From Mytilus edulis (lineage: Eukaryota): a stretch of DNA of 64,000 nucleotides. The stretch lies in the NCBI RefSeq assembly GCF_963676685.1, contig NC_092352.1:80848001-80912000 (forward strand), written 5' to 3'. Positions 40,742-61,800 of the stretch are shown piece by piece. Both the position numbers and the translations under genes were made by a program. The notes beneath the pieces were generated by a model. The model did no database searches and had not been told where the DNA came from. It was given only the letters and a program-made list of their open reading frames with translations. Positions within the stretch are counted from its first letter, which is position 1. Each line of letters begins with the position of its first letter.

Positions 40742-40950
40742 TCCAAGGCATACTCATATTTGGCACAACCTTGGAATAGTATATGTATATATATATACAT
40801 GTTCCTGGCACAACCAACTTTTGGGAATTGTTGGGTCCTCAATGCTCTTCAACTTTATACTTGTTTGGCTTTTTTTTTTTTTTATCTTAGCGTCACTGCA
40901 TTATGATAAGTCTTATGTAGACGAAACGCGCAGGGCGAAACGCGCGTCTG
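40742..40950 (+). mobile_element. Retrozyme-like repeat copy with disrupted hammerhead core
   Basis: Homologous to 52637-52816; core reads CTGCATTATGATAAGTC...GACGAAACGCGCAGGGCGAAACGCGCGTC. Confidence 0.75.
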
Positions 40951-42309
40951 AAAATGCAATTAAATTAATTAAAACAGATTAATACACTTCTTGCAGTTGT
41001 GGAATCTATATTTCAGTCGCCTATCAGGCGGGTCGTAATGAGGGACCTTCATGGCGAATTTATAACGGTAAAAATTATTGCCAATTGACGTTAACGGTAT
41101 TTTTTGGTGCAGACGATACAATGTACACTTTCTTTTAGACGATAAAAAATAGGCTGATTGACGATTTTATTTCTTACATGATTCTATTTAGTTTTTAATT
41201 TAGACATATTTTGGTCGCGTCTTCTGATTGACTGACGTTGTTTTGTTTATCAGCTCATAGACAAAATTTTGCGATGTGACCGTGACGTCATCAACGTAAA
41301 TGGAATTTACAATTAAATTACTAAGAAATGACTATAATTTTTTTTCTATCTATTCGAAATAACAAAAAATGTGGTGCACACTTTAAATTAACCCACAATG
41401 CGGGTTATTCAGTGTGCACCACATTTTTATGTTATTTCTTCCTCTAGACAGAAAAGAGTGTTCCGATTACTAAATAATGTGTTATTCTTAAAAGAAGTTG
41501 GAATATATTATAAAATATAATTTTTTTTACTATTACCTAAAATGATTTAATTTTCATCACGTTATCTTACTGTTGATATTTATTTGAAAATAATAAATTT
41601 GCTTTAGTCTAGAATTTTAGTTAATTGAAGGACCTTTTGTCTGATTAAAAAAAATATTGGAATTAGCTCTCGCCGCGATATGGCCTTTTTGTGCTAATGC
41701 AGGGTAAAGCAAACAATAATCAATCAATCAATCATAGACAGAAAAAATATTACAGTCATTCCTTAAATAGAAAATCTAAGAAAGTTTGTAAGAAATCATG
41801 TCAGTAGTACGTATTAACTGACTACTGAGATGATGATTCCATCAGACGAAGAGTCAACTAGCAATGTTACCGACTCAGTGCTAGTAAATGAAATTAATAC
41901 TATCAATTTCGAGCATTCGAAGCGCTTTTCTGGATCAATCATCACCAGGAGGATGATAAAACTCCTACTAAGTCATGATATATATTTTTGCAAGCCTTCA
42001 TCTTTTTTTTTCTGCATCAGCTCGACTAGCTCATACTATGGAAGTATTACCGTTAAGTGCAGATTCTGACAAAGTATAGCATTTTTGTTAGACAGAAAGT
42101 ATAAACTTTGAAAACGATCGTCAGTAAAAAAGGTAAAACAGGAATATTGGTACTCATACCGATTATTCAAAAGTTTACCCACAAATTGTAACGAAACCGA
42201 CACTTTATATAAATAAAAACAACAACTGCCTATTGATTTAATCGTTCAAATTCTATGTACAAAACTAATTCAAATTTCAAAAATACAAGATTAACAAAAA
42301 CAATTCAAA

Positions 42310-43452: not shown

Positions 43453-45339
43453 TCACTGGTACGCAAACACTTGTATCGATTTGGAAGATCCAACAAGCCA
43501 CAAATTTCCACATTCATCTACTATCATGTTGGTAGTATTACAAACATCGTCATTTTGACTCAACAAATTTTGTTGAAAATTGCCGTTATCGAATAACATA
43601 TAGACAATTCCATTTTTGCTGTCAGCTAGAAAAACATTTCCATGATTATCCGAAGCGATAGCTTTAAACTCTGCTTTATTTTTCGTAAAAGTTTTAAGAA
43701 CCTTAAAATGTTTATCAGTAAAATGAACGAAATCTCTGCAGAAAGAAATTACAAAATTCGAATTGTTTGTTTGTTTAATAGTTACATTTCTAGTAGACCA
43801 TATATTATACTTGTTTTTGATAGAATCTGCAACTTCAACATTATTGAAGACACCGTCTTTCTCTGATAACTCATAAAGTCTGTCATCTTTTTCGTTTAAA
43901 ACAAGCAAATTGCCATTGCTAACTACACAACAAAACTCGCAATTTTTAAATGGAACTTCGTAGCGTTTTTTATGTTTTGATTCTTTTATATCAAAAATCG
44001 AACCTTCAGACCAAATCCATATATCATTGGCAGATTTCCTAATAGTACGTTTTGGGAATCTTGAATAAGGAAGTGTATAATTATTTGTCTTGAATATTCC
44101 TTTGCAACTATAATTACAAATAGTGTCATCGGTTAATATCCAGGCATTGTCATTTTCAGCTGGAACAATGTCTTGTATATTGTTCTCAAGCTTGAATTCG
44201 AATATTTTTTTTGATGTAATCAACGATTTACATGCAAGACCTAGATCAGGCATAGACAATTGTGGGTAATTTGGCGTTGTTTCGTTATTCTTTGCTCTAG
44301 CAGTAACCTTTCCAAATATTTCTTCTATAACATCTTCAGTGACATCATTCCATTCAAAATTCAAATCGTGAGTGGGAGGGAAAACATTTGCAGATGTATC
44401 CAAGACGTTATCAAGATGTTTTCCGATGACCGGAAACTCGTTAAGGAAGTTTGCATCTGACGAATTATTAACGAAATCCTCTGTTATCATGACAAGTCCC
44501 AATAAGGACATTTTTCCTGTTTCGATTTCGCTTCTGAAAATTTTAAGTTCTTTTATATCTTCCGTCTTTATATTGTCAATAGTATCTAAGTTTTTATTTT
44601 TAATTTCTTCGACAGTACTACAAAACCGATCTTTCAAACTCGCAGCACGTTCGTTTACATCCTGTTTTAATACGAGACAGTGTTTATCATAGTTAATTTC
44701 TTTTAATCTTACAATTTCAGCAGTATTGTGTAGAAATGAAATTCTAGATTTGAAGCTAGCGATTCTGACTAACAACTTTTCCTTTTTAGTTTGAAGCAAA
44801 GAAGATAATTTTTTAAATTGATGACGCCGATGGTAATCTTCTGAACATTCGATGCACAATAAACAATTACATGGTTTACAGAAGAAGGAAAATTCCTTGC
44901 CATGGTCTTTGCATTTGTTCTTATTATTAGCTCCAGACTGATCAACCTCCTCTGATTTAAGCTTTTTCAGGGGTTCAACTGTATGATTCTTGGATGCTTT
45001 CAATTTTCCATGGTAATTTCGACAATTACTGCATAACTTGATTTTACATTCCAAACATGTTGCCATTGCAACATTTTGTTCATCACATAACTCGCATGAA
45101 TCCATAACTGCATTTGGTTCCGTCAAATATTCCAATTTGAACGGATAAGGTTTAAGACCACTAACTCCATTATCCGGTAAAGATATATTTGTTTTACATA
45201 ACGGACAAACTATTTTACTATCTCTCACATCAAGTTTCTGAAGGCACGGTGAGCAGAAAGTATGATAACAGTCTAAAAGTTTAGGTTCTATAAAACAAGA
45301 CTTACATATTCCACACTTGGAATTACAGCCTTCCGCCAT
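43453..45339 (-). CDS. Tripartite motif (TRIM) E3 ligase-like protein: RING, 2 B-boxes, coiled coil, NHL-like beta-propeller; 628 aa, intronless CDS
   Basis: C3HC4 RING CGIC..CYHTFCSPC..CPLC; B-box1 CELC..CLEC..CSNC..H..H; B-box2 CKDH..CKPC..CIEC..HRRH; IASDNHGNVFLAD and IVDECGNLW repeats. Confidence 0.9.
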   Translation of the reverse strand: MAEGCNSKCGICKSCFIEPKLLDCYHTFCSPCLQKLDVRDSKIVCPLCKTNISLPDNGVSGLKPYPFKLEYLTEPNAVMDSCELCDEQNVAMATCLECKIKLCSNCRNYHGKLKASKNHTVEPLKKLKSEEVDQSGANNKNKCKDHGKEFSFFCKPCNCLLCIECSEDYHRRHQFKKLSSLLQTKKEKLLVRIASFKSRISFLHNTAEIVRLKEINYDKHCLVLKQDVNERAASLKDRFCSTVEEIKNKNLDTIDNIKTEDIKELKIFRSEIETGKMSLLGLVMITEDFVNNSSDANFLNEFPVIGKHLDNVLDTSANVFPPTHDLNFEWNDVTEDVIEEIFGKVTARAKNNETTPNYPQLSMPDLGLACKSLITSKKIFEFKLENNIQDIVPAENDNAWILTDDTICNYSCKGIFKTNNYTLPYSRFPKRTIRKSANDIWIWSEGSIFDIKESKHKKRYEVPFKNCEFCCVVSNGNLLVLNEKDDRLYELSEKDGVFNNVEVADSIKNKYNIWSTRNVTIKQTNNSNFVISFCRDFVHFTDKHFKVLKTFTKNKAEFKAIASDNHGNVFLADSKNGIVYMLFDNGNFQQNLLSQNDDVCNTTNMIVDECGNLWLVGSSKSIQVFAYQ

Positions 45340-50251: not shown

Positions 50252-52143
50252 TCATTGATAAGAAAACACCCTAATACATTTTGATGCTCCAACCAGCCAC
50301 ATATATCCACATTCATCTATTATCATGTTGATTGTATTATTTACACCATAGCTTTTATTCATCAATGTTTGCTTAAAAACACGATTTTCAGATATAACAT
50401 AAATCATATCACTTACGTAGTCCGCCACGAGAGTATTTCCATAGTTATCTGTGGCTAAAGATTTAAAAAGGGCATACGGCTTCTGAAATGAATCGAGAAC
50501 TATGAAGTTTTTGTCAGCAAAAACAATTACATCTTTGCTAAAAGATATAACAAAGTTGAAATTTCGCAATTGCTTCATAACTATTCTTTCGCCGGTAAAT
50601 GTGCTACCTTGTTGTAATATGTTGTTTGGATCTTTTAGTTCAAATTTGTTCTGAATACATGCACTTGAATATTCTGTATCTTTTAACTCGTAGAATATTT
50701 TTTCAGTTGGACTATACACAAACAGATTACCATTCCTACTGAGGCAACACAGTAATCCATTTCTAAATGGAACAGTGCAGAAACGAGAATAAATTGATTT
50801 ATTATTCTTCACAACAGAATTCTCATACCAAAACAAACTCTAGATGCAGATTTATGAACAAAATGTTTAATGTCAGCATGAGTATCAATGCTCTCGTCTT
50901 TTATACCCTTACTACTATACCTACAAGCCATACCTGCAGTTAATAACCATGCATTGTCATTATTTGTTGGAATAATGTCTAGAACTTCATTCGAAACTAC
51001 AAACTCGGACCGTTTTACTACTTTATGCGCAGGTAAGAGACTAAGTTCAGGTACAGGTAAATGTGGATACATTGGTTTTACCTCTTTTTCCTTTTCTGTG
51101 GCAGTTATCTCTCCAAATATTTTTTCTATAACAACTGAACTGACATCATCCCATTCATAATTCAAATTGTGAATGGACGGAAAGATATTTACGGATTTAC
51201 GCAAGGTTTCATCAAGACGTTTTCCAATGACAGAAAACTCTTCAAGGAAGTGTGTATCTGATGATTGATTAACGTAATTCTCTGTTGTCATTATAAGTCC
51301 TGATAACGAAATTTTGTCAGTTTCGATTTGATTCATGTACTTGTCAAGTTTTTCTATATCTTTCTTCTTTATATCGTCAATAATATCTAAATTTTTATTT
51401 GTAAGCTCATCGACAGCACTACAAAACCGATCTTTCAAATTGGTGGCACGTTCTTTCACATTGTGTTTCAGAACGAGACAGTGTTTGTTATAGTTATCTT
51501 CTTTTAGTTTAACCATTTCAGCAGTATTTTGTAGAAACGATATTCTGGCTTTGAAACTAGCGATTCGGACTAACAACATTTCCTTTTTATTTTGAAGTAT
51601 TGAAGATAAGTTTTCAACTTGATGACAAGGATGAATTTCTTCTGAACAATCAAAACACAATAAAGTATTACACGGTCTACAGAATAAGGTAAGTTCCTTG
51701 CTATGCTCTTTACATTTTGTCTTGACAGTTGCTTCAGTTTGATCTAGTTTCTCTGATTTAAGAATTTTCAACGACCGAATCACATGATTCTTTGATGTTT
51801 TCAATTTTCCGTGATAATCGCGACAATTGCTGCATAAATTGGTTTTGCAGTCCAAACATTTTGACACCGCAAAGTTTTGATCATCGCATAAGTCGCATGC
51901 ATCCATAACCTCATTGTTTACTTTCACATATTTTAATTTATATGGATAAGGTTTTAGACCACTTACTCCTTCGTCTGGTAAAGAAATGGTTGTCTTACAT
52001 AATGGACAGATTATCTTATTGTCTTTGATATCCAGTTTCTGAAGACATGGCAAACAGAAAGTGTGATAACAATTTAAAAGTTTAGGTTCTGTGAAAACAA
52101 AAGACAAACATATTCCACATTTCGAATCACATCCTTCCGCCAT
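50252..52143 (-). CDS. Second TRIM paralog with a single frameshift near 50835 (assembly error or pseudogene)
   Basis: ORFs 52143-50809 and 50836-50252 together align end to end with 43453-45339 (MAEGC.SKCGIC...DECG..WLVG...I.VF.YQ). Confidence 0.85.
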
Positions 52144-52636
52144 GTTCGATATTATAAAATACGTCCGACAAGGAAGTATAAGGGCTCACGTCATCATGTG
52201 TTTAAAGTTCAATGCCAATAACAACCATTTAGATTTGAAGTGTAATGTTGAAAACGTGATACAAGTATCGTCTTATTAACAATCAATAATATATTAATCA
52301 ATGTTGAAGTATTTTATTGATGTTTGTTTAGTAAAATTTATTAGATCTTCTTCTTTAAAACTTATACTTGTTTTTTAAACTTTGTCTTATCAGTACATTT
52401 GAAAAAGTTTTGAGCGCAAACCAAACCTACACAGTTTTTGATATTACTGCCCTAAATCAAAATATAAGATAGATTGCAGACTTGTTAATATGACAACTAT
52501 CATGTAGTTTGTACCCGCTACAAGTCAGAAACCTGTATTTCATTGGTTTTCTTTGATCGAAGTTTATCATATTTGTTGAATTTGTTTTAAAATTTGTTTG
52601 ATTTTTTTAAATTGTTTTGTTTCATAAATTAACCCA

Positions 52637-52816
52637 GGCATAGACTACCTTAGATGTATTTGGCACAACTTTTTGGAATTTTGGATCCTCAATGCTCTTC
52701 AACTTTGTACTTGTTTGGCTTTATAAATATTTTGATATGAGCGTCACTGATGAGTCTGATGTAGACGAAACGCGCGTCTGGCGTACTAAATTATAATCCT
52801 GGTACCTTTGATAACT
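52637..52816 (+). mobile_element. Retrozyme-like short element carrying a type I hammerhead, flanked by a 9-bp direct repeat
   Basis: ATTAACCCA at 52628-52636 and 52817-52825; the element interrupts a reverse copy of the common interspersed repeat. Confidence 0.8.
52741..52784 (+). ncRNA. Type I hammerhead ribozyme (minimal)
   Basis: GCGTCA-CTGATGA-GTCT gatgt AGAC-GAAA-C gcgc G-TC^TGGCGT: all core nucleotides present and stems I, II and III pair. Confidence 0.85.
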
Positions 52817-53577
52817 ATTAACCCATTAGGTGTCTTGTTTGAATGGTTTTACATTCATTTGTGTCATGTCTTGACATTTTATAGTTAACTTCATAATATG
52901 GGTTTTGTTTTATTGTTGAAGGTCCTACATTGACATTAAGACATTGCAGTCATAAAAATTCCGAGCACGACAATAAAATTTAAAAACACAAAAAATACTG
53001 GACTCCGAGGAAAATTCAAAACGGAAAATCCCTAATGAAAGGCAAAATCAAAAGCTCATACACATCAAACGAATAGATTACAACTGTTAAATTCCTTGGT
53101 ACAGACATTTTCTTATGTAGAAAATGGTGGATGAAACCTGGATTTATAGTTAGCTTAACCTCTCACATCAAATTCCATTATATTAATAACGATGTATGAA
53201 CAAAATAAACAGACATAATAAAGTGTAAACTTTTATGAACGAGAACCAAGGGGTCTGGTAAACAATTTCCCGAAGGCAACAATAACATTTCTTTTTATCT
53301 TGGTATATCTGAAAAAAAGTAAAGGAATGGCTAAGATCTGTTCTTCAACTTTGTACAATATTTTGCATTTAATCTTTTTTGATCAGCGTCACTGATGGAT
53401 TTTACATAGGCAAACCCGCTCGTCTGTCGTACAAAATTATAAAACTGGTATCTCTAATGAGTTTTTGCTTATATTCTTTGGCTGTTCATGTTTCATTTCC
53501 GGCAATGAAATTATTTATTCATTTCTGTTTATTTTATATAGTGTTCGTTCTATCTATGACTACATACCCGACTAAAT

Positions 53578-54785
53578 ATCACAAGAGTGCACACGCTGAA
53601 ATGTCTTGCACTCTTTACTAATCATTGATATTATGTTGATAATCCTAAATATAAAACTTTATTACGACTGTTTTATAAACTTAAGGTGGTACCCAACACT
53701 TTCACTAAAATTAATTTGGCTCGTTTAAGTTTCATAAAATTTTGACAAAGTATTTACTTTTACCCTTTGACAAAAATATGAAAATTTCAAAAAATTGAAC
53801 CAACCAATTTATCAGAAAAGTTACACTGGTTATATAGCAGTTTGACAAACACCAATTTTGATCATTGAGAATCTTAATATTCCCTTAACAACACAACGTA
53901 ATTAAAACGTTTAGCTGATTTTACAGAGTTATCTCCCTGTAGTGTTATGTACCACCTTAACATTAACCAAGATGACTAAACATTGACCAGTGAACCATTA
54001 AAATGAGATCAAGGTCAGATGAACCATGCAACGCAGACATTAATACAATTCTTCCATACAACAAATATAGTTGACCTATTGCTTATACATTGTAGTTTAA
54101 GGAAAATAGACCAAAACACAAAAACTTAACACTGAGCAATGAACCGTGAAAATGAGATCAATGTCAAATAAAACCTACGCGACTGACGTATAGATCATAA
54201 AATATTTCCATACACCAAATATAGTTGACCTATGGCAAATAGTTTTAGATAAATAGACCAAAACACAAAAACTTAACTATAACAACTGAACCATGAAAAT
54301 GAGGTCAAGGTCAAATGACACCTGCCAGTTGGACATGTACACCTTACAGCAAATACATCGTATACCGAATATACTAGACCTTTTGCTTATTGTATCTGAG
54401 ATATGGACTTGACCACCAAAACTTAACCTTGTTCACTGATCCATGAAATGAGGTCGAGGTCGAGTGAAAACTGTCTGATGGGCATGAGGACCTTGCAAGG
54501 TACGCACATACCAAATATAATTATCCTATTACTTATAATCAGAGAGAATTTAACATTACAAACAAAACTTAACTTTTTTTTTCAAGTGGTCACTGAACCA
54601 TGAAAATGAGGTCAAGGACATTAGACATACGTCGTAACATGAGGCATCTATATACAAAGTATGAAGCATCCAGGTCTTCCACTTTCTAAAATATAAAGCT
54701 TTTAAGAAGTTAGCTAACGCCGGCGACGGCGCCGGATCACTATCCCTATGTCGAGCTATCTGCAACAAAAGTTGCAGGCTCGACA
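53578..54785 (+). mobile_element. HINE-like element with internal tandem units, hosting a TTAA MITE (53685-53956)
   Basis: Repeated GAACCATGAAAATGAGGTCAAGG units; 3' hairpin TGTCGAGC..CTGCAAC AAAA GTTGCAG.GCTCGACA. Confidence 0.75.
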
Positions 54786-55074: not shown

Positions 55075-55140
55075 GAGTCTTATGTAGACGAAACGCGCGT
55101 CTGGCGTACTAAGTTATAATCCTGGTACCTTTGATAACTA
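55075..55140 (+). mobile_element. 5'-truncated retrozyme-like copy (3' half of hammerhead only)
   Basis: GAGTCTTATGTAGACGAAACGCGCGTCTGGCGTACTAAGTTATAATCCTGGTACCTTTGATAACTA, near-identical to 52752-52817. Confidence 0.8.
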
Positions 55141-55859
55141 ATTAAATAAGTTCAGAGAAGATTAATGTTTGTCAATTCGTCACAATCCGTATTTAATCAT
55201 AACAAATCGATGAATCATTATAACCCTTTGTTATATCTGTGCTCTCTCTTCTACCTATCAATCAGACAAAATATAATCAGTAAACAGTTCTCCTAAAAAA
55301 AAACTAAACGGTTGGATGTAAATGTCTGTTCAAAATCTAAGTCTAATTTGAATTGTAGAGCAGTTTCCATATGTCTTTAAGTTAATTTTCATATCTGCGC
55401 ATGCCTTTAACTCTTTTATATTCATAAAATCACAAAACCAAATAAAATTTTCGTGTTGGCAAATTTTGTTTCGTGCACAACGGTTATGGTTAAGACAATA
55501 TACCTTTTTTATGATTAGCAATACAAATTTCTGTTTTAACGATTTGCCTAAAATAAATGTAAGGATCCAATAACAAGCAACAAAAACAAATTCAGAAGAT
55601 TCCCCCCTCCCCTGGAAACTAGTTAACAGACTATCTTGTATTTATTATAAACCACGTAATGCAACAGCTTTATAACATCTTAGATTTCTGTTATATTTAT
55701 ATTCGATACTATATTGGATAATATTTTGAAAGCAGTTAAAACGCTTCTTAAGCTTACAATCCTTCTTTCAAACTGCTTTAAGGTGACTTTAATTGGTGCT
55801 ATATCATTGCGTTCATTTCTTGTATGATATGAAGTAAACATAATCAATAAAAGTTGCTA

Positions 55860-58800
55860 TCATAAAATCGAGCACACCGATGATAATTTATGATTCGAGT
55901 TGTCCACAGCTTTCCTGGTGAGTAATTGATAATGTTTACTTTTGCCCGGTTTACGTCTTCCTTTCTTTTTGCTTTGCGGAGCTCTCATTGGTGACACCTG
56001 AAGTGAAAAGTATATTAATAATTTTGATCTATCATATGACCTGTCCAGATTCAGAAATTAATTCTTCTTTAATTTAAACACGTTAAATGGAGAGCGCTAT
56101 ATACTTCATATTTGAATTTTTCAAATATAAAAACGCTAAAATTCCTCAAACAATTCAATGAATGTAGATGCACAAATTCAACATATTTGTCGATATTTCT
56201 GTGAATTTTCAGGGATCAGGATTGAACACAGCAGTAGATGGAACATAACACTAAACAAGTCCCCGCTATCATAACTTTTTTCTGGACAGTTTGTGTACAA
56301 AACTTTCATTAAGACCCCGTTCCTTTCCAAACATTTATTGAAGGTGAAATCAGTACACCGTTATATTATAGACACATCAGACTGTACTGGTTACCTGCAC
56401 TCTGGATACACAAATCAAGGTACTTCATATCGGATAATTTTAGAAACCATTTTCATATAATTATTTTTTTTTAGTTTAAAAGTTTCAGTCAAAATGTGTT
56501 ATCACTGGTCCTTAACATTTCATTTTTTACTTCAAATACATATACGAAGGGAATACTTTGTTTTGAATATGTGCTTCTGTCTATCTGTTTGTTCACATAT
56601 TTAAAGTCTCTCAAAATAATTTTGCAAATAAGTCCGCTAAAACCGGTGATTATGGGCCGTATTAGACTTGCAGTTAGGTGGCAGTTTTATTTGCTCTGTG
56701 TTGATGGTCTTGCTGTGACGTGAAACGAAGAACAGCAGCAAAAGAGCTGTAACTTTTAAATTTTGTGATTTTTGTGTATTTATTGATTTTGTCTTATGGA
56801 TAGATCCCCCTTTATCTTTTTTGTTTGTATAAAATTCCTAAGTCGAAAGAATTTAAAAGAAATTGTCGAATAATTTTTATAACAAAAGGTGCACAACTTC
56901 AACATAAATAGACTTCTGTGAGATCTGTGTTGAAAAATGTAGGAGTGGTTGATTTCACAAATTAGATATCCACTTTTAACCACCCCTCAACCCCCTCTCA
57001 TGTTTGCTAACTGGATAGCATAGTAATACTTAGACATTTTTTAGATTACGTTTACAGTACAGTATATTGAGTGAGATTTAAGTGATAATGTGCAAGACAT
57101 TAACAACACAAGTCATGTATGAAGTTACCGTCCTTATGCTGAAGCCAGTAATATAAACAGAAAATAAAACAGCCGTGAAATGGATAAGCAATAAATTTAA
57201 ATTTGATACATTTCCGCAAAAACTACAAAAAGATTGTAACATGCTGGTATTATCGCTAATTACCTGAAATTACTTAAGGGGGTTGGGACTATTCGACTGC
57301 GCATAATTTCATGCATGAATTACCATGCACACGAAAAGTTTGTGTCGTAAATTCACTATTATGTTTTTAATATTTTGATTGAATAAAAACGTTAAATAAT
57401 GGTATTTTTGTCAATTAAAAAATATTATCGTTATCATGTGTATCTGCAAAAGGCTCAAAATGACATTTCACCTAATTTCACCATTTCACCTCCAAATTTT
57501 GGGTTTTAATGCAAAATATTTTTTTTCTTTATCGGTGTACAGTTTTCGCAGACAGTTTTCTTGATATTCCGATAAAAATATGTCAACACCTCTATTTTCC
57601 CTATTACTTCATAAAAAATGGTCCCTTTTACATACCTGTTTAAAAGTAATATTTTGAGCTTAAATAATCCAGGACCCCCTGTTTTTTTCGACCAATTTGA
57701 TTCCCTCACTGCAAAGATTAAAATAACAAAAAATACGGCACTTCTGACAGAACCTCGAATAGGCCCGAGCCACCTTAACTATCAATGAAAATAATAAGGT
57801 AATAGACAAATCAATGCTATACAATTTGAATACTAGCACTTTTTATAAATACATAAGAGCTTACCTTAACAATTTCTGGTACACTGGACACAGAGTCGAT
57901 TCTTTTCCTTGCAGGAAGTCGTTGTACAGGATATTCTAATGCAAGTCGATGCTGTCTGGTCTTAACATTGATAGGTAATACTTTTGTTATTTCTGGAATA
58001 CGGAATAATATTTAGAAAACATTCATTTTCGTGGAACAAAACAGTCAAAAAAGATATACAAAGAGAGGCAACCAGCAATAGTCAGAAGCGTGTTGAAACG
58101 AAAATAATTTCAATATCATCAAAATTAGTGGTTGGAAAAAGTATTCCTGTATTTCAATAGAGATACATAGTCATATAATAAATAATCATAAGACAAACGT
58201 ATGTAAAATGTTACATATTGTTCACAGTTTAGTTATTGTAACATAGAGAGCAGTTGCTTCATAGTTGTTACCCAATCGTTTGGAGTGTTTGAGCTTGGAG
58301 TTTGCCAACTTTTCGTTTTGAATTTTCCTTCAAGTTCTGTATTTCTATTATTTTTCTTTTTATATGAAAAAAAAATATCATTTGCCATTAAAAAACTATA
58401 AGAATAAGAAAATCATAAATAAATTATTATAAACAAGTTGGAACAATACAAAATTATGGATTCATTTATTTTTCGAGGGTACCAATAAGGATTGAAAAAA
58501 AGTGTATTTTCGTGGACATTTAAAAGCGAGATATTTCCAAAGTCTACATACATGAATAGAAAATATGAAATTCGTTGAACATTTATATTCGAAGTTTACA
58601 TGCATCCACAACATTCTTGCAATCTAGTATTATGCCACAATCTTAAAAGACAAAACTAGAATAAATGTATATGCCTATACATGTTTTCCTTTTCTGCCAA
58701 GTTGAAAATGAGTCAAATCGTTCGTTTTGTCTATAAATACATTCTTTCTTACCTGGATCCCATGGTGGATTACCTTCCACTGAAGGACTATTATGTAGAC

Positions 58801-61800
58801 AAAGTAATGGCGAGTATTTGTTCTTCTCTAACTGTACTACCATTCGGGAGGCGTCTTCAGACATTGAGAAGTTGATAACTGGGCAGTGCATATCAATCAT
58901 AGTTATCTGTTGTCCATATTGTAAACTCCACAATCTGATTGTGCTGTCCATAGAGGCTGAAACACAATAAACGAACATCATATAAGTGCTCCGGAAAGGA
59001 TAGAAGATTGTAAATAATGTACTCAAACACTTGTTTTCCTGCGAGTAGTCAGCCGCGAGAAAAAAAACCACTCATAATTTTTTGAAAATAAAACACAAGC
59101 TGAAACATCTTTTCTATTTCACAATTGGTTACTTTAATTAAGTATAATAATACAGATAATACTACTTTACTTTTTCTTTGTCTAATACAACAGTGTTTGT
59201 CAAAAATCAACAATCGAAATTTGTTTTATCTAATTTATTTTGCCAATATAACTGTTTAAGGTATGTCATACAAATTCAAGTTAACTTTCAGTAAATGTAA
59301 ACATGGTAAATGTGACTGTCGTCAGTACATAAGTTTTACCATGACCAATTTGATGTGTCTCATCATGCTAGCTACATATCATTCGCAATACTACATCTTT
59401 AGATTACAGTATAGTCGTTTGATCTGTTATTTTACCGATTTGTTCTATTCTAGATTGTGATGTTTAGTCTATGGCATGGATGGTGATGCATACATAACAG
59501 GAGACGATTGCCCTATAGATGCATCTGGTATCTGATATTTGAACATTAACTTGTAAATAAACTCATCATAGATACCAGAATTGAAATATTTTATTTACGC
59601 CAGACGAACGTTTCGTTTACAAAAGACTCATCAGTGACGATCGAAAATGTTAAAAAACCAATAAAGTACGAAGTTGAAGAGCAATGAGGATCAAACATTC
59701 CTAAAAGTTTTTCCAGATACAGCTAAGTTATCTATTCCTGAAACTACTGTATCAGAAATTTCTGCCCATTCCCAACACTTATTGTTTTTCAATTCATCCT
59801 AACCTGAAATAATCAATTTTCCTTTATTTGTCAATTTGACAACTGTGATACCATTGGTATGGCCGATAAGTTGATATTTAACGACCCCAGTGTGGACGCA
59901 CCATGCAGTTAGTTGTCCATTCTTGCAACCGGAAACAACATGTTCGTTATCATCACCAATGGCAACAGTACAAACGATAACAGTGTGCTCGACTAAAACC
60001 TGTAATTGTACACATATGTATAAGTAATGTTAATGAATCGCTTAAACTAGGAATGGAATTAAAACAAATAAGTAGAATTGTTTTATCAATGGCTTATTAC
60101 ATGTATAACAAACTCAAAGGTAAACAGTTCTCTGGTGAACACAATTGGGTCTGTTAGGGGTTAAACCTGCAACAAGAGTTACTTGTTTGGTTAAAAGAAC
60201 AAGTTGTTTACATATATAACAGATACTTCAATATCATTTAAACCTTGCATAGGTTGTTTGTTTAAACTAATTCTTATAGATCTCATAGTAATCATAAGTA
60301 GGGTGCTTGTATATTTTCAATTTTTCAGCATATCAACTATAGAAGTGTTTCTATTAGTTTCTATTAGTTTAATATATACCAATGAAAGTGAATGTTTTGT
60401 TTGTGATACTCAATAACGAGACATTAAAAACATATTGATTCTCAGTTTGATTGAATTTAAGATTATGTGATAATTAACATATACATCTACACTCATCACA
60501 ATAAAGACATCTATTAAAATATGATAATGTAAGTTATAACATGATTCGCAATATCATGTCGATTTTTTCACATACATACAATTGTGAACTTTTAGCGCAA
60601 TATTGTAGTTGTTGAATTATACAAAAGATGGACGCAACTCATTTTGATTCTAAAGCAAAAAAAGCTTATATATTACAGCAGATGACAATATGAGAAAAAC
60701 TGCAGGTGTGTAAATACAAATCATTTTAGAGGGGCGTGTCCTATAACTGTAAAACCAAATTAATTCTGAAATTATTTTTTGAAAGTCTATGACAATATAA
60801 GGAGCCTATTTGTACCAGTAACCAGTAAACATTTCTATTGGAGAATAATATAAGATTGAACATACCTGAATCAGTTTTCCGTTAAACATTTCCCATATTT
60901 TGAGCGTTTTGTCGGCTGACCCTGTTACCATATACTTATCATCAACGGAACAGGCAAGACAAGTAACATGTTCAGCATGGTTAATGTATGCAACTATTGA
61001 CTCATCTTCCAACGCTACAACCTTCACACTGTAAAGGTTTTTATTACTTTATATTTTAGTTTGTTATAATAGACATTTCAATTATTAAAGTTATAAGATA
61101 CTCAGAATTCATAAATCTGATTAAAGCATTTCTTACAGGACTATTAAAAAAAAGGCGATTGATTTTTCTGGCGCACTCCATACCGGTACATATTTGGGTA
61201 TGCATTTTTGAAATAAAAGTACTAATAAAGAGTAGCGTTGTCGGAAAATACGCGAAGTACAAACATTACGCTATGGTAACGTTGTTACAATAACGCTATA
61301 CTGTGTGACGTTATATTATATGCATTAGCTTTCACGACGATTAAACGTATAGACAACACAACGCATGATTTATTAAGATTCTTCAACATTTAATGGTGCC
61401 GTAACCTTTTGATATATATGGATTCAAGGCTGAAGTCAGTTCGTGCTGGACAAAAAGGAGCCGTCAAGAAGCTACTGGTGAAATTCGACGAGTTAAAGTA
61501 AAAAAAAGACACAGAAGTTGACGAAGTGAAAGCCCTTGATGATGCCGTCACGCAGAAACAGAAAACATTGATTGACCTGAATAACAGACTTTTGGAACAA
61601 ACATCGGAGGAAAATCTGGAGCAGGAAATCACCGACTCAGATGAGTATATGTACGAACTTGATTGCAAAATTAGACAAATTCGGAAATTTATTAAATCCT
61701 TTGAAACAAATACTAGAATTTCGCATGATAATGTTTGTCCTTCAACGAGCAGACTTAACCCAGACGCATATAATTTCACACCCGAAGCTAGAGTTGATAT

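What the first reader, a model, noticed from the sequence alone, without database searches (positions are those of the whole stretch)
52628..52825. Intact self-cleaving hammerhead ribozyme in a ~180-bp mobile repeat (retrozyme-like system)
Seen: full core CUGAUGA...GAAA...GUC^, 6-bp stem I (GCGUCA/UGGCGU), 4-bp stem II, and a minimal stem III with a palindromic ACGCGCGU sequence; predicted cleavage after 52778. The element is bounded by a 9-bp direct repeat inside an older repeat. Five related copies occur within 20 kb (40742, 52637, ~53330, 55075, 59555). Established: minimal type I hammerheads with palindromic stem III cleave as dimers and mark Penelope-like elements and non-LTR retrozymes, which form small circular RNAs; such elements have been reported in mussels. 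Inference: a recently mobile non-coding ribozyme retroelement family, here ~500 bp upstream of a TRIM gene.
Basis: partly seen in the sequence, partly recalled or inferred. Interest (0 to 1): 0.8.

Follow-up and report, generated by a model that had tools for sequence, protein, structure and literature searches.

The report
Truncated copy of known mussel retrozyme
This is one half-length, dead-end insertion of a small mobile repeat carrying a self-cutting hammerhead RNA, a family already published for Mytilus mussels and present many thousands of times in this genome, so it is real but ordinary.

Summary
The hammerhead is real. Window 52741-52784 (+) has the full core, a 6-bp stem I, a 4-bp stem II and a 2-bp stem III within the palindrome ACGCGCGU. 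Rfam Hammerhead_1 gives 32.6 bits (cut-off 34), E 2.2e-6.

The 180 inserted bases (52637-52816) lie between two ATTAACCCA 9-mers inside an older repeat. Removing them exactly restores that repeat in 2 of 3 paralogous copies.

It is not a 180-bp element. It is the 3' half (unit positions about 1-187) of a 355-nt tandem-repeat unit. The ribozyme core occurs 15,117 times in this 1.37-Gb, 14-chromosome genome.

Copies share one fixed 3' end, 44 nt past the cut site, and have scattered 5' ends. RNA-seq reads match the family but run on into the missing half, and none cover the flanks.

This fits the non-LTR retrozymes published for Mytilus galloprovincialis: 350-390-bp repeats, construct DRtz_Mg353, abundant circRNAs (PMC7229834). 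A solo half-unit with one ribozyme cannot release a monomer.

Earlier notes of this scan reached the same verdict on other DNA of this genome. Already known; low interest.

The parts
52628..52636 (.). Target-site duplication, copy 1 (ATTAACCCA)
   Evidence: Exact 9-mer. Keeping exactly one 9-mer gives the best alignment to uninterrupted paralogs of the older repeat.
52637..52816 (+). Inserted retrozyme fragment, 180 nt. Homology to the 355-nt family unit spans 52636-52822 (unit positions 1-187), because the target 9-mer resembles the unit at both junctions.
   Evidence: BLAST against natural unit L002:1146-1500 gives 96.4%. 40 genomic matches at 96-99%. Alignment.
52741..52784 (+). Type I hammerhead ribozyme motif; predicted cleavage after C at 52778
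   Evidence: RF00163 32.6 bits, E 2.2e-6. Core and stems read. Monomer hammerhead fold -5.1 kcal/mol against monomer minimum -9.6; predicted dimer minimum -29.3 is the double hammerhead.
52770..52777 (+). Palindrome ACGCGCGU: a 2-bp helix III plus GCGC loop as a monomer, an 8-bp intermolecular helix III as a dimer
   Evidence: Sequence; cofold.
52817..52825 (.). Target-site duplication, copy 2 (ATTAACCCA)
52503..52627 (.). Left part of the older, low-copy repeat that received the insertion
   Evidence: Matches in L032-L036; alignment A1.
52826..52940 (.). Right part of the same older repeat
   Evidence: Contiguous with the left part in L033 and L034.
40815..40931 (+). Old decayed copy of the same family (unit 31-140, 83%), ribozyme disrupted
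53339..53466 (+). Old decayed copy (unit 58-185, 74%), ribozyme core degenerate
55075..55144 (+). Young 70-nt copy (unit 117-186, 97%), 5'-truncated inside the ribozyme, with the same 3' end
59552..59739 (-). Older copy (unit 1-188, 78%) with the UUUUG loop-2 of subfamily B; stem II mismatch
50809..52143 (-). Neighbouring TRIM-like ORF (RING plus B-boxes); its ATG is 493 bp from the element, on the opposite strand to the ribozyme

Best explanation
Window 52637-52816 is a retrotransposed, 5'-truncated solo copy of the mussel non-LTR hammerhead retrozyme family. The full element is a non-coding unit of about 355 nt that sits in the genome as head-to-tail arrays. Inferred from the literature: array transcripts are cut by the type I hammerhead in each unit, the monomers are ligated into abundant circRNAs, and a Penelope-like element's reverse transcriptase copies the RNA back into DNA by target-primed reverse transcription. 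Shown here: every DNA copy examined ends at one position, about 44 nt 3' of the cut site, just before a conserved hairpin. The 5' ends vary from 0.3 to more than 8 units. This pattern is what cDNA synthesis from a fixed internal site, stopping early or running round, would give (inference). The window copy stopped after about 180 nt. It joined at a CCCA microhomology and duplicated 9 bp of target. It keeps an intact ribozyme but lacks the 168-nt half with the hairpin and has no second ribozyme. If transcribed it could at most cut once, so it is a dead-end relic. It has no demonstrated role for the neighbouring TRIM-like gene.
For: Motif: RF00163 32.6 bits, E 2.2e-6. Family: 355-nt period, 7.7 copies, 95% matches in L003; natural units in L002; 1427 first-look candidates, with the 40 other matches scored at 96-99%; exact core pattern 7725+7392 = 15,117 hits against 0 for the reversed control. 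The exact 21-mer from the other half has only 6,400 hits, as 5' truncation predicts. Ends: in 19 of 19 distinct arrays found with the window query the 3' end falls at unit 183-191, while the 5' ends are scattered. In the 20 arrays around the first intact-core hits on C1 taken in order, 18 of 20 end at 175-191 (L070 ends at 166; the array in L072 breaks at 301). In that sample 12 of 20 arrays are shorter than one unit. Insertion: excising 52637-52825 scores 62 against at most 55 for every other offset tried versus L034B, and 38 against at most 36 versus L033, with ungapped blocks across the junction (45 nt with 38 identical; 44 nt with 34 identical). The third paralog's alignment does not reach the junction. 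RNA: 1572 reads of RNA-seq run X21 lie only within 52620-52839 and none in either flank. 563 reads continue at 52819 into the unit's other half. There is no pile-up of starts or ends at 52778/52779, and depth is continuous across the site. Selection on the ribozyme: between subfamilies A and B the hammerhead block is 0.91-0.94 identical, against 0.66-0.74 beside it. Non-coding: longest stop-free stretch 50 aa in three joined natural units; GC 0.39. Literature: M. galloprovincialis, about 5000 type I HHRs in 350-390-bp repeats, two ribozyme families, DRtz_Mg353, circRNAs, PLEs proposed as mobilisers (PMC7229834, passages).
Against: The Rfam score is 1.4 bits below the curated cut-off. There is no compensatory change in any of the 12 hammerhead pairs over 58 distinct copies, and pairing (95.4%) is no higher than in column shuffles, so structure gets no covariation support. 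Self-cleavage, circular RNA and reverse transcription were not and cannot be shown with these tools. A 9-mer shared between junction windows arises in 31 of 1190 mismatched control pairs. Over 35 arrays, target duplications were not clearly above control: mean longest shared word 6.03 against 5.61, with a control maximum of 6.06. RNA run X21 carries another organism code (A) than the best DNA holder X15 (B), so empty flanks may reflect divergence rather than silence.
Confidence: 0.9

Rival explanations
1. The solo ribozyme has been co-opted. Transcripts running from the TRIM-like gene's divergent promoter along the + strand would carry the hammerhead in the active sense and be cut, trimming upstream antisense RNA.
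For: The ribozyme is intact and lies on the + strand, 493 bp from the ATG of a minus-strand gene.
Against: No RNA reads in either flank in the one RNA-seq run laid. The copy's own variants (C at 52645, G at 52758) are absent or about 3% among RNA reads. The identical core variant occurs 108 times and the general core 15,117 times. The neighbouring gene is split into two ORFs relative to its intact paralog.
Confidence: 0.03
2. It is a piece of satellite DNA spread by DNA-level processes (unequal crossing-over, segmental duplication, ectopic repair), not by reverse transcription.
For: The family forms tandem arrays. Some copies are paralogous duplicates with identical flanks: L005, L006, L015-L017 on C12, and L013 with L030.
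Against: Dispersed copies on all 14 chromosomes share one 3' end and have scattered 5' ends. The window copy is a precise insertion with a 9-bp duplication. The 3'-proximal core is 2.4 times as frequent as the 5' segment.
Confidence: 0.05
3. It is a Pol III SINE with a hammerhead-like passenger.
For: Short, non-coding, 5'-truncated copies with target duplications.
Against: ARAGORN finds no tRNA-like gene in a three-unit array. Arrays of up to more than 8 units and a partial-tandem layout resemble Penelope-like insertions (passages of PMC8557442). No poly(A) or simple-repeat tail at the 3' end.
Confidence: 0.02
4. The motif is a chance match.
For: Below Rfam's gathering score.
Against: E 2.2e-6. 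15,117 exact copies against 0 in the control. It is the best conserved block of the unit between subfamilies.
Confidence: 0.005

Closest known systems
Non-LTR retrozymes of Mytilus galloprovincialis (Cervera and de la Pena, Nucleic Acids Res 2020, PMC7229834; construct DRtz_Mg353)
   Same: Type I hammerhead with a 2-bp helix III and tetraloop. Tandem repeats of about 350-390 bp (here 355, and about 362-367 for subfamily B). Two ribozyme variants (loop 2 UUAUG and UUUUG). Thousands of copies, low GC (0.39), non-coding, abundantly transcribed, target duplications longer than 4 bp.
   Different: The window copy is only 0.5 unit and solo. The copy count here is 15,117 exact cores against about 5000 reported from the 2016 draft assembly. 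Sequence identity to the deposited clones was not testable here. In the passages I read I saw no mention of the fixed 3' end 44 nt past the cut site or of the scattered 5' ends; the term 'truncated' has 0 occurrences. Supplements were closed.
Penelope-like elements with hammerheads in their pseudo-LTRs (Cervera and de la Pena 2014, reference only; Craig et al. 2021, PMC8557442, passages)
   Same: Hammerhead near the 3' end. Insertions as partial tandems (a 5'-truncated copy followed by full copies). Variable target duplications.
   Different: No reverse transcriptase or GIY-YIG ORF in the 355-nt unit, so it is non-autonomous. Which PLE clade mobilises it was not established here.
Amphibian satellite 2 and axolotl retrozymes; Schistosoma Sm-alpha (the latter recalled, not from a call)
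   Same: Type I hammerheads in about 330-350-bp tandem repeats with a weak helix III whose palindromic loop allows double-hammerhead dimers (PMC7229834, passages).
   Different: The amphibian HHR_Amex1 has a 1-bp helix III and needs dimers. The mussel motif has 2 bp and is reported to cleave from a cloned genomic repeat.
Plant LTR retrozymes
   Same: Non-autonomous retroelements expressed as hammerhead-processed circRNAs.
   Different: Plant elements have type III hammerheads, LTRs, PBS and PPT, 4-bp duplications, about 700 nt and high GC (PMC7229834, passages). None of these applies here.

Membership tests
Hammerhead ribozyme, type I (Rfam RF00163) | Conserved core CUGAUGA ... GAAA ... (N)UH cleavage triplet | tested here: met
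   CUGAUGA 52747-52753, GAAA 52767-52770, GUC 52776-52778.
Hammerhead ribozyme, type I (Rfam RF00163) | Three helices around the core, with helix I open and helices II and III closed by loops | tested here: met
   6-bp stem I, 4-bp stem II, 2-bp stem III plus GCGC loop. 95.4% of cells paired over 58 copies.
Hammerhead ribozyme, type I (Rfam RF00163) | Score at or above Rfam's curated gathering threshold (34 bits) | tested here: inconclusive
   32.6 bits, E 2.2e-6 on 451 bases; not listed at gathering. Elsewhere in the genome 26 of 74 scored candidates pass. This is an operational cut-off, missed by 1.4 bits.
Hammerhead ribozyme, type I (Rfam RF00163) | Site-specific self-cleavage | not testable with these tools
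   No read-end pile-up at 52778/52779 in RNA-seq. That fits ligated circles or uncut RNA and decides nothing.
Hammerhead ribozyme, type I (Rfam RF00163) | Covariation supporting the helices | tested here: inconclusive
   0 of 12 pairs change on both sides; 6 further pair types, all one-sided. The copies are too alike to inform.
Metazoan non-LTR retrozyme (PMC7229834) | Type I hammerhead inside short (150-450 bp) tandem repeats, from dimers to large multimers (family level) | tested here: met
   355-nt period, 7.7 copies in L003; arrays of 1.3-3 units in L002, L004, L008, L011, L027 and others.
Metazoan non-LTR retrozyme (PMC7229834) | This copy itself is a repeat with at least two ribozymes, so a monomer can be released | tested here: not met
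   One ribozyme, 0.5 unit, no tandem repeat of this period in window 38000-64000. The copy is a fragment of a member, not a functional member.
Metazoan non-LTR retrozyme (PMC7229834) | Non-coding, low GC (below 45-50%), no LTR, PBS or PPT | tested here: met
   GC 0.389; longest stop-free stretch 50 aa in three joined natural units; units abut head to tail without LTRs. PBS and PPT were not searched for specifically.
Metazoan non-LTR retrozyme (PMC7229834) | Abundant RNA of unit length, largely circular | tested here: inconclusive
   Family RNA is present, and reads cross both the cut site and the junction into the other half of the unit. Circular and tandem templates give the same reads.
Metazoan non-LTR retrozyme (PMC7229834) | Target-site duplications longer than 4 bp when present | tested here: met
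   9 bp at the window copy, confirmed against uninterrupted paralogs. Not clearly detectable across 35 arrays.
Metazoan non-LTR retrozyme (PMC7229834) | Sequence identity to the published mussel clones (MN642551-MN642576) | not testable with these tools
   The accessions are named in the paper. No tool here reaches GenBank, and the supplements are closed.
Penelope-like element (autonomous) | ORF encoding reverse transcriptase with a GIY-YIG endonuclease | tested here: not met
   No ORF in the unit. Such ORFs exist elsewhere in the genome (L083).
tRNA-derived SINE | tRNA-like head with Pol III boxes | tested here: not met
   ARAGORN finds 0 genes in L002:900-2300.

The most novel reading that the evidence does not exclude
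The family's genomic copies do not begin or end at the ribozyme cut site. Every array examined ends about 44 nt 3' of it, immediately before a conserved hairpin of about 57 nt that shows compensatory changes, while the 5' ends scatter over 0.3 to more than 8 units. This would mean that the hammerhead does not define the termini of the template that is reverse-transcribed. Instead, cDNA synthesis would start at an internal, hairpin-marked site on a circular or uncut multimeric RNA and could run round it (rolling-circle reverse transcription). The ribozyme would then serve RNA maturation only. Earlier notes of this scan suggest the hairpin is shared with Naiad-type Penelope-like elements, which lack hammerheads; I could not test that.
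Probability: 0.4. Interest if true: 0.45.

Novelty: already known. Interest (0 to 1): 0.12.

Why it matters
For this locus, very little. It is one of more than 15,000 copies of a published repeat family, and a truncated one. Its value is as a clean, datable example: a precise insertion, a 9-bp duplication, microhomology at both joints, and an uninterrupted site visible in paralogs. Such examples can feed a genome-wide study of how retrozymes are copied back into DNA, a step the published work leaves open (PLEs are only proposed as mobilisers). For annotation, it warns that intact hammerhead motifs in mussel genomes are mostly solo fragments that cannot make circles.

Tried and rejected
Rfam at the gathering threshold found nothing in the window. 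The motif only appears with the E-value threshold. The RAGATH-1 hammerhead hit (16.3 bits, E 4.3) is noise.

Stem covariation was uninformative. It used 58 of the 59 distinct copies. I left out L022:1184-1239, whose 5' half is replaced.

TSD detection over 35 arrays by longest shared word was not clearly above control.

My first excision test used 9-mer coordinates 1-2 nt off and gave a weak result. One search repeats it with the right coordinates and replaces it.

I considered that the GGACGUUUCGUCC segment of the second half masks the ribozyme core by complementarity. I rejected this as a conserved feature, because subfamily B has GGAAAUUUAUUUCC there, which keeps the hairpin but not the complementarity.

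I tried to test the earlier notes' claim that the hairpin is shared with Naiad elements:
- A covariance model R1 was built from 33 of the 42 distinct copies. I dropped L024:949, L020:2473, L028:1764 and L072:4680 (deletions or insertions) and L005, L006, L015, L016, L017 (array starts with foreign 5' flank).
- Over the genome, R1 returned only 150 identical-scoring retrozyme copies.
- Over 46 held sources, it gave one non-BLAST-detectable relative at window 41789-41892 (-), 43.1 bits. Its context is cut by another repeat.
- A GIY-YIG search gave 150 matches, but its loci could not be cut out.
- The one small locus I then fetched (L083) is the interior of a canonical RT-then-GIY-YIG element and has no hit.
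So the Naiad link stays untested.

Six 'orphan' hits of the second-half 21-mer all proved to be ordinary units with a mutated core.

Searching papers for the ribozyme's letters found nothing.

Papers. PMC7229834: search listing, start of abstract, and passages by 'find'. PMC8557442: listing and passages. PMC7761336, bioRxiv 10.1101/721605 and PMC10886601: listing only. The supplements of PMC7229834 (Figures S4, S5, S9; Table S2), which should show the mussel ribozyme families, the clones and the proposed life cycle, were not seen. The double-hammerhead work on newt RNA, Sm-alpha and the general TPRT model are recalled, not from a call.
Full report
THE OBSERVATION

- Stem I: GCGUCA (52741-52746) pairs with UGGCGU (52779-52784). 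This gives six pairs, two of them G.U.
- Core: CUGAUGA at 52747-52753.
- Stem II: GUCU/AGAC, four pairs around the loop GAUGU.
- Then GAA, followed by the palindrome ACGCGCGU (52770-52777).
- C17 is at 52778, so the predicted cut is after 52778.

As a monomer, helix III is A-U and C-G closing a GCGC loop.

Rfam's Hammerhead_1 model matches 52741-52784 end to end at 32.6 bits, E 2.2e-6 for the 451 bases searched. This is 1.4 bits under the curated cut-off of 34, which is why the whole-window scan at the gathering threshold listed nothing. A loose core pattern hits the window 3 times against 0.33 expected.

Folding: the canonical monomer hammerhead costs -5.1 kcal/mol against a monomer minimum of -9.6 for another fold. 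The predicted minimum for two copies (-29.3) is exactly the double hammerhead with an 8-bp intermolecular helix III.

WHAT THE ELEMENT IS

A 191-base query found 1427 first-look candidates in the window's own assembly. The 40 other matches scored were 96-99% identical and lay on many chromosomes. The assembly has 1,368,414,245 bases, and the window is C9:80848001-80912000.

Several hits lay about 355 bases apart. Tandem Repeats Finder gives a 355-nt period, 7.7 copies and 95% matches in L003. L002 shows three successive units.

I used the natural unit L002:1146-1500 as a ruler. On it, the window copy is positions 1-187 at 96.4%. It lacks the other 168 nt.

The exact ribozyme core, with loop 2 left free, occurs 7725+7392 = 15,117 times, against 0 for the reversed control. 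The window's own loop-2 variant (G at 52758) occurs 108 times, some of them in uniform arrays. A 21-mer from the missing half occurs 6,400 times.

Rfam's model run over the genome passes its cut-off at 26 of 74 scored candidates, and in 0 of 14 control genomes.

ENDS OF THE COPIES

Among the 19 distinct arrays recovered with the window query, all 19 end at unit 183-191 (...GATAACTATT[TAC]). Their 5' ends fall anywhere in the unit. That sample is biased towards copies that cover the query.

For a less biased sample I fetched the first 20 arrays on C1 that hold an intact core, in listing order.
- 18 of these 20 end at 175-191. L070 ends at 166, and the array in L072 is broken at 301.
- The 5' ends scatter again.
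- 12 of 20 arrays are shorter than one unit.

The fixed end lies 44 nt 3' of the cut site. So the window copy is the commonest kind: a sub-unit, 5'-truncated solo copy.

THE INSERTION

The two 9-mers ATTAACCCA are at 52628-52636 and 52817-52825. The left flank has only six relatives in the genome. In L033 and L034 the left and right flanks are contiguous.

I modelled the empty site in a script. Removing 52637-52825, which keeps one 9-mer, gave the best local alignment:
- Against L034B: 62, versus at most 55 for every other offset or reading tried.
- Against L033: 38, versus at most 36.
- Both have ungapped blocks across the junction (45 nt with 38 identical; 44 nt with 34 identical).
- The third paralog's alignment does not reach the junction.

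An earlier run with coordinates 1-2 nt off was weak. A 9-mer shared between junction windows occurs in 31 of 1190 mismatched control pairs, so the paralog comparison is the stronger evidence.

The 9-mer resembles the unit at both joints...TATCCCA|GG at the 5' side and ...ACT|ATTTAC at the 3' side. That is microhomology of the kind expected in target-primed reverse transcription (inference). Across 35 arrays, duplications were not clearly above control.

THE OTHER COPIES IN THE WINDOW

All five exist.
- 40815-40931: core broken by insertions.
- 53339-53466: degenerate.
- 55075-55144: young at 97%, but it starts inside the ribozyme.
- 59552-59739: minus strand, subfamily B-like, weakened stems II and III.

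No tandem array of this family lies in 38000-64000.

CONSERVATION

Over 58 of 59 distinct ribozyme copies, 95.4% of cells pair, but none of the 12 pairs changes on both sides. The values do not exceed column shuffles.

More telling is a comparison of eight natural units of subfamily A (355 nt, loop UUAUG) with three of subfamily B (about 362-367 nt, loop UUUUG). The hammerhead block is 0.91-0.94 identical, while the sequence on both sides is 0.66-0.74.

Directly after the fixed 3' end lies a hairpin of about 57 nt (CUGGG...CCCAG). In it, 3 of 23 predicted pairs keep pairing through changes on both sides (33 of 42 distinct copies were used). The window copy lacks it.

RNA

One RNA-seq run kept as raw reads (X21, organism code A, about 6% read) laid 1572 reads. 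All lie within 52620-52839 and none in either flank.
- 77% of reads run on into unlike sequence.
- 563 reads continue at 52819 with the start of the unit's other half.
- 60 reads enter at 52629-52634 from the unit's end.
- Depth is continuous across the cut site (bins 52760-52779 and 52780-52799).
- No pile-up of read starts or ends is reported for this run.
- The window's G at 52758 is read as T in about 97% of reads.

So the family is transcribed from full units, and the RNA sampled is mostly joined across the cut site. That fits circles or uncut multimers and cannot tell them apart. This locus shows no transcription of its own.

Caveat: the best DNA holder (X15, 0.87 of the words) carries another organism code (B). 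The empty flanks may therefore reflect species divergence.

A small-RNA run (X24) laid 155 reads inside the element, with ends at places other than the cut site. Contigs of X15 and X16 bridge one or both junctions without differences, so the insertion is present in those samples. X15 may be the assembly's own source.

COMPARISON WITH WHAT IS KNOWN

Cervera and de la Pena (2020, PMC7229834; passages read) report the following for Mytilus galloprovincialis:
- About 5000 type I hammerheads of two similar families, usually within 350-390-bp repeats.
- Co-transcriptional cleavage of a cloned genomic repeat at about 0.1 per min.
- Abundant circRNAs of 350-400 nt.
- A dimeric construct named DRtz_Mg353.
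- Target duplications longer than 4 bp 'when present'.
- Penelope-like elements as the likely mobilisers.

They describe a 2-bp helix III capped by a tetraloop as the invertebrate form. They reserve the dimer requirement for amphibian motifs. Everything measured here fits that family. What I could not do is align to their clones (MN642551-MN642576) or see their supplements.

Craig et al. (2021, PMC8557442; passages) describe hammerheads near the 3' ends of canonical PLEs, partial-tandem insertions and 30-40-bp tails. The arrays here have the same layout.

The unit has no ORF (longest 50 aa), a GC of 0.39 and no tRNA-like part.

EARLIER NOTES OF THIS SCAN

I consulted these after my own end-mapping. 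Several follow-ups on other DNA of this genome reached the same verdict: a known mussel retrozyme, with one fixed end and scattered starts. Two notes propose that the hairpin is the leader of Naiad-type Penelope-like elements.

I confirmed the hairpin, its covariation and that copies end just before it. My attempts to test the Naiad link were uninformative.

VERDICT

The element is a 5'-truncated, solo, dead-end copy of an already published retrozyme family. It lies 493 bp upstream of, and antisense to, a TRIM-like gene that is itself split into two ORFs relative to its intact paralog. Novelty: already known. Interest: low.

Noticed in passing
window 50252-52143 (-) compared with 43453-45339 (-): These are tandem TRIM-like paralogs about 6.8 kb apart. 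The upstream one is a single 628-aa ORF. The one next to the retrozyme is split into a 444-aa ORF (62% identical to residues 1-415) and an overlapping 194-aa ORF (40% identical to residues 443-628). This suggests a frameshift and a possible pseudogene.
   Followed up: partly
window 41789-41892 (-): A diverged relative of the retrozyme's post-terminus hairpin (43.1 bits with my model, E 2e-8), not detectable by BLAST with the unit. It has compensatory changes (CUGGG/CCCAG becomes CUGAG/CUCAG). It is preceded by a GATAGTATTAATTTCATTTAC stretch that resembles the family's 3' end, and is followed from about 41738 downwards by an unrelated repeat with 1280 first-look candidates.
   Followed up: partly
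window 52972-53080: A roughly 105-nt repeat with 2780 first-look candidates in the genome at about 90% identity. It also forms an inverted pair with 58310-58355. It may be a MITE or SINE.
   Followed up: no
window 53975-54626: A tandem repeat of about 147-154-nt units (1.8 copies by TRF at 82%, four units by the repeat finder), lying between the decayed retrozyme copies.
   Followed up: no
L083 (G000:C9:78185000-78186800), 2.7 Mb from the window: An open 576-aa stretch with reverse-transcriptase motifs followed by a C-terminal GIY-YIG domain. This is a canonical Penelope-like element with a second copy 3.75 kb upstream. 150 GIY-YIG matches were scored genome-wide, many in open frames of 700-1050 aa.
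   Followed up: partly
loci L058, L062, L065, L069, L075, L010, L021 and window 52636, 59739: The 5' ends of truncated copies seem to cluster near unit position 1 (5 of 20 in the ordered C1 sample) and near 286-300 (5 of 20). This may reflect pause sites or microhomology hot spots of the reverse transcriptase. The sample is too small to test.
   Followed up: no
window 52620-52839, small-RNA run X24: 155 small-RNA reads map inside the element, mostly with the first mate on the + strand. Recurrent ends lie at 52762, 52784 and 52787, none of them at the ribozyme cut site.
   Followed up: no
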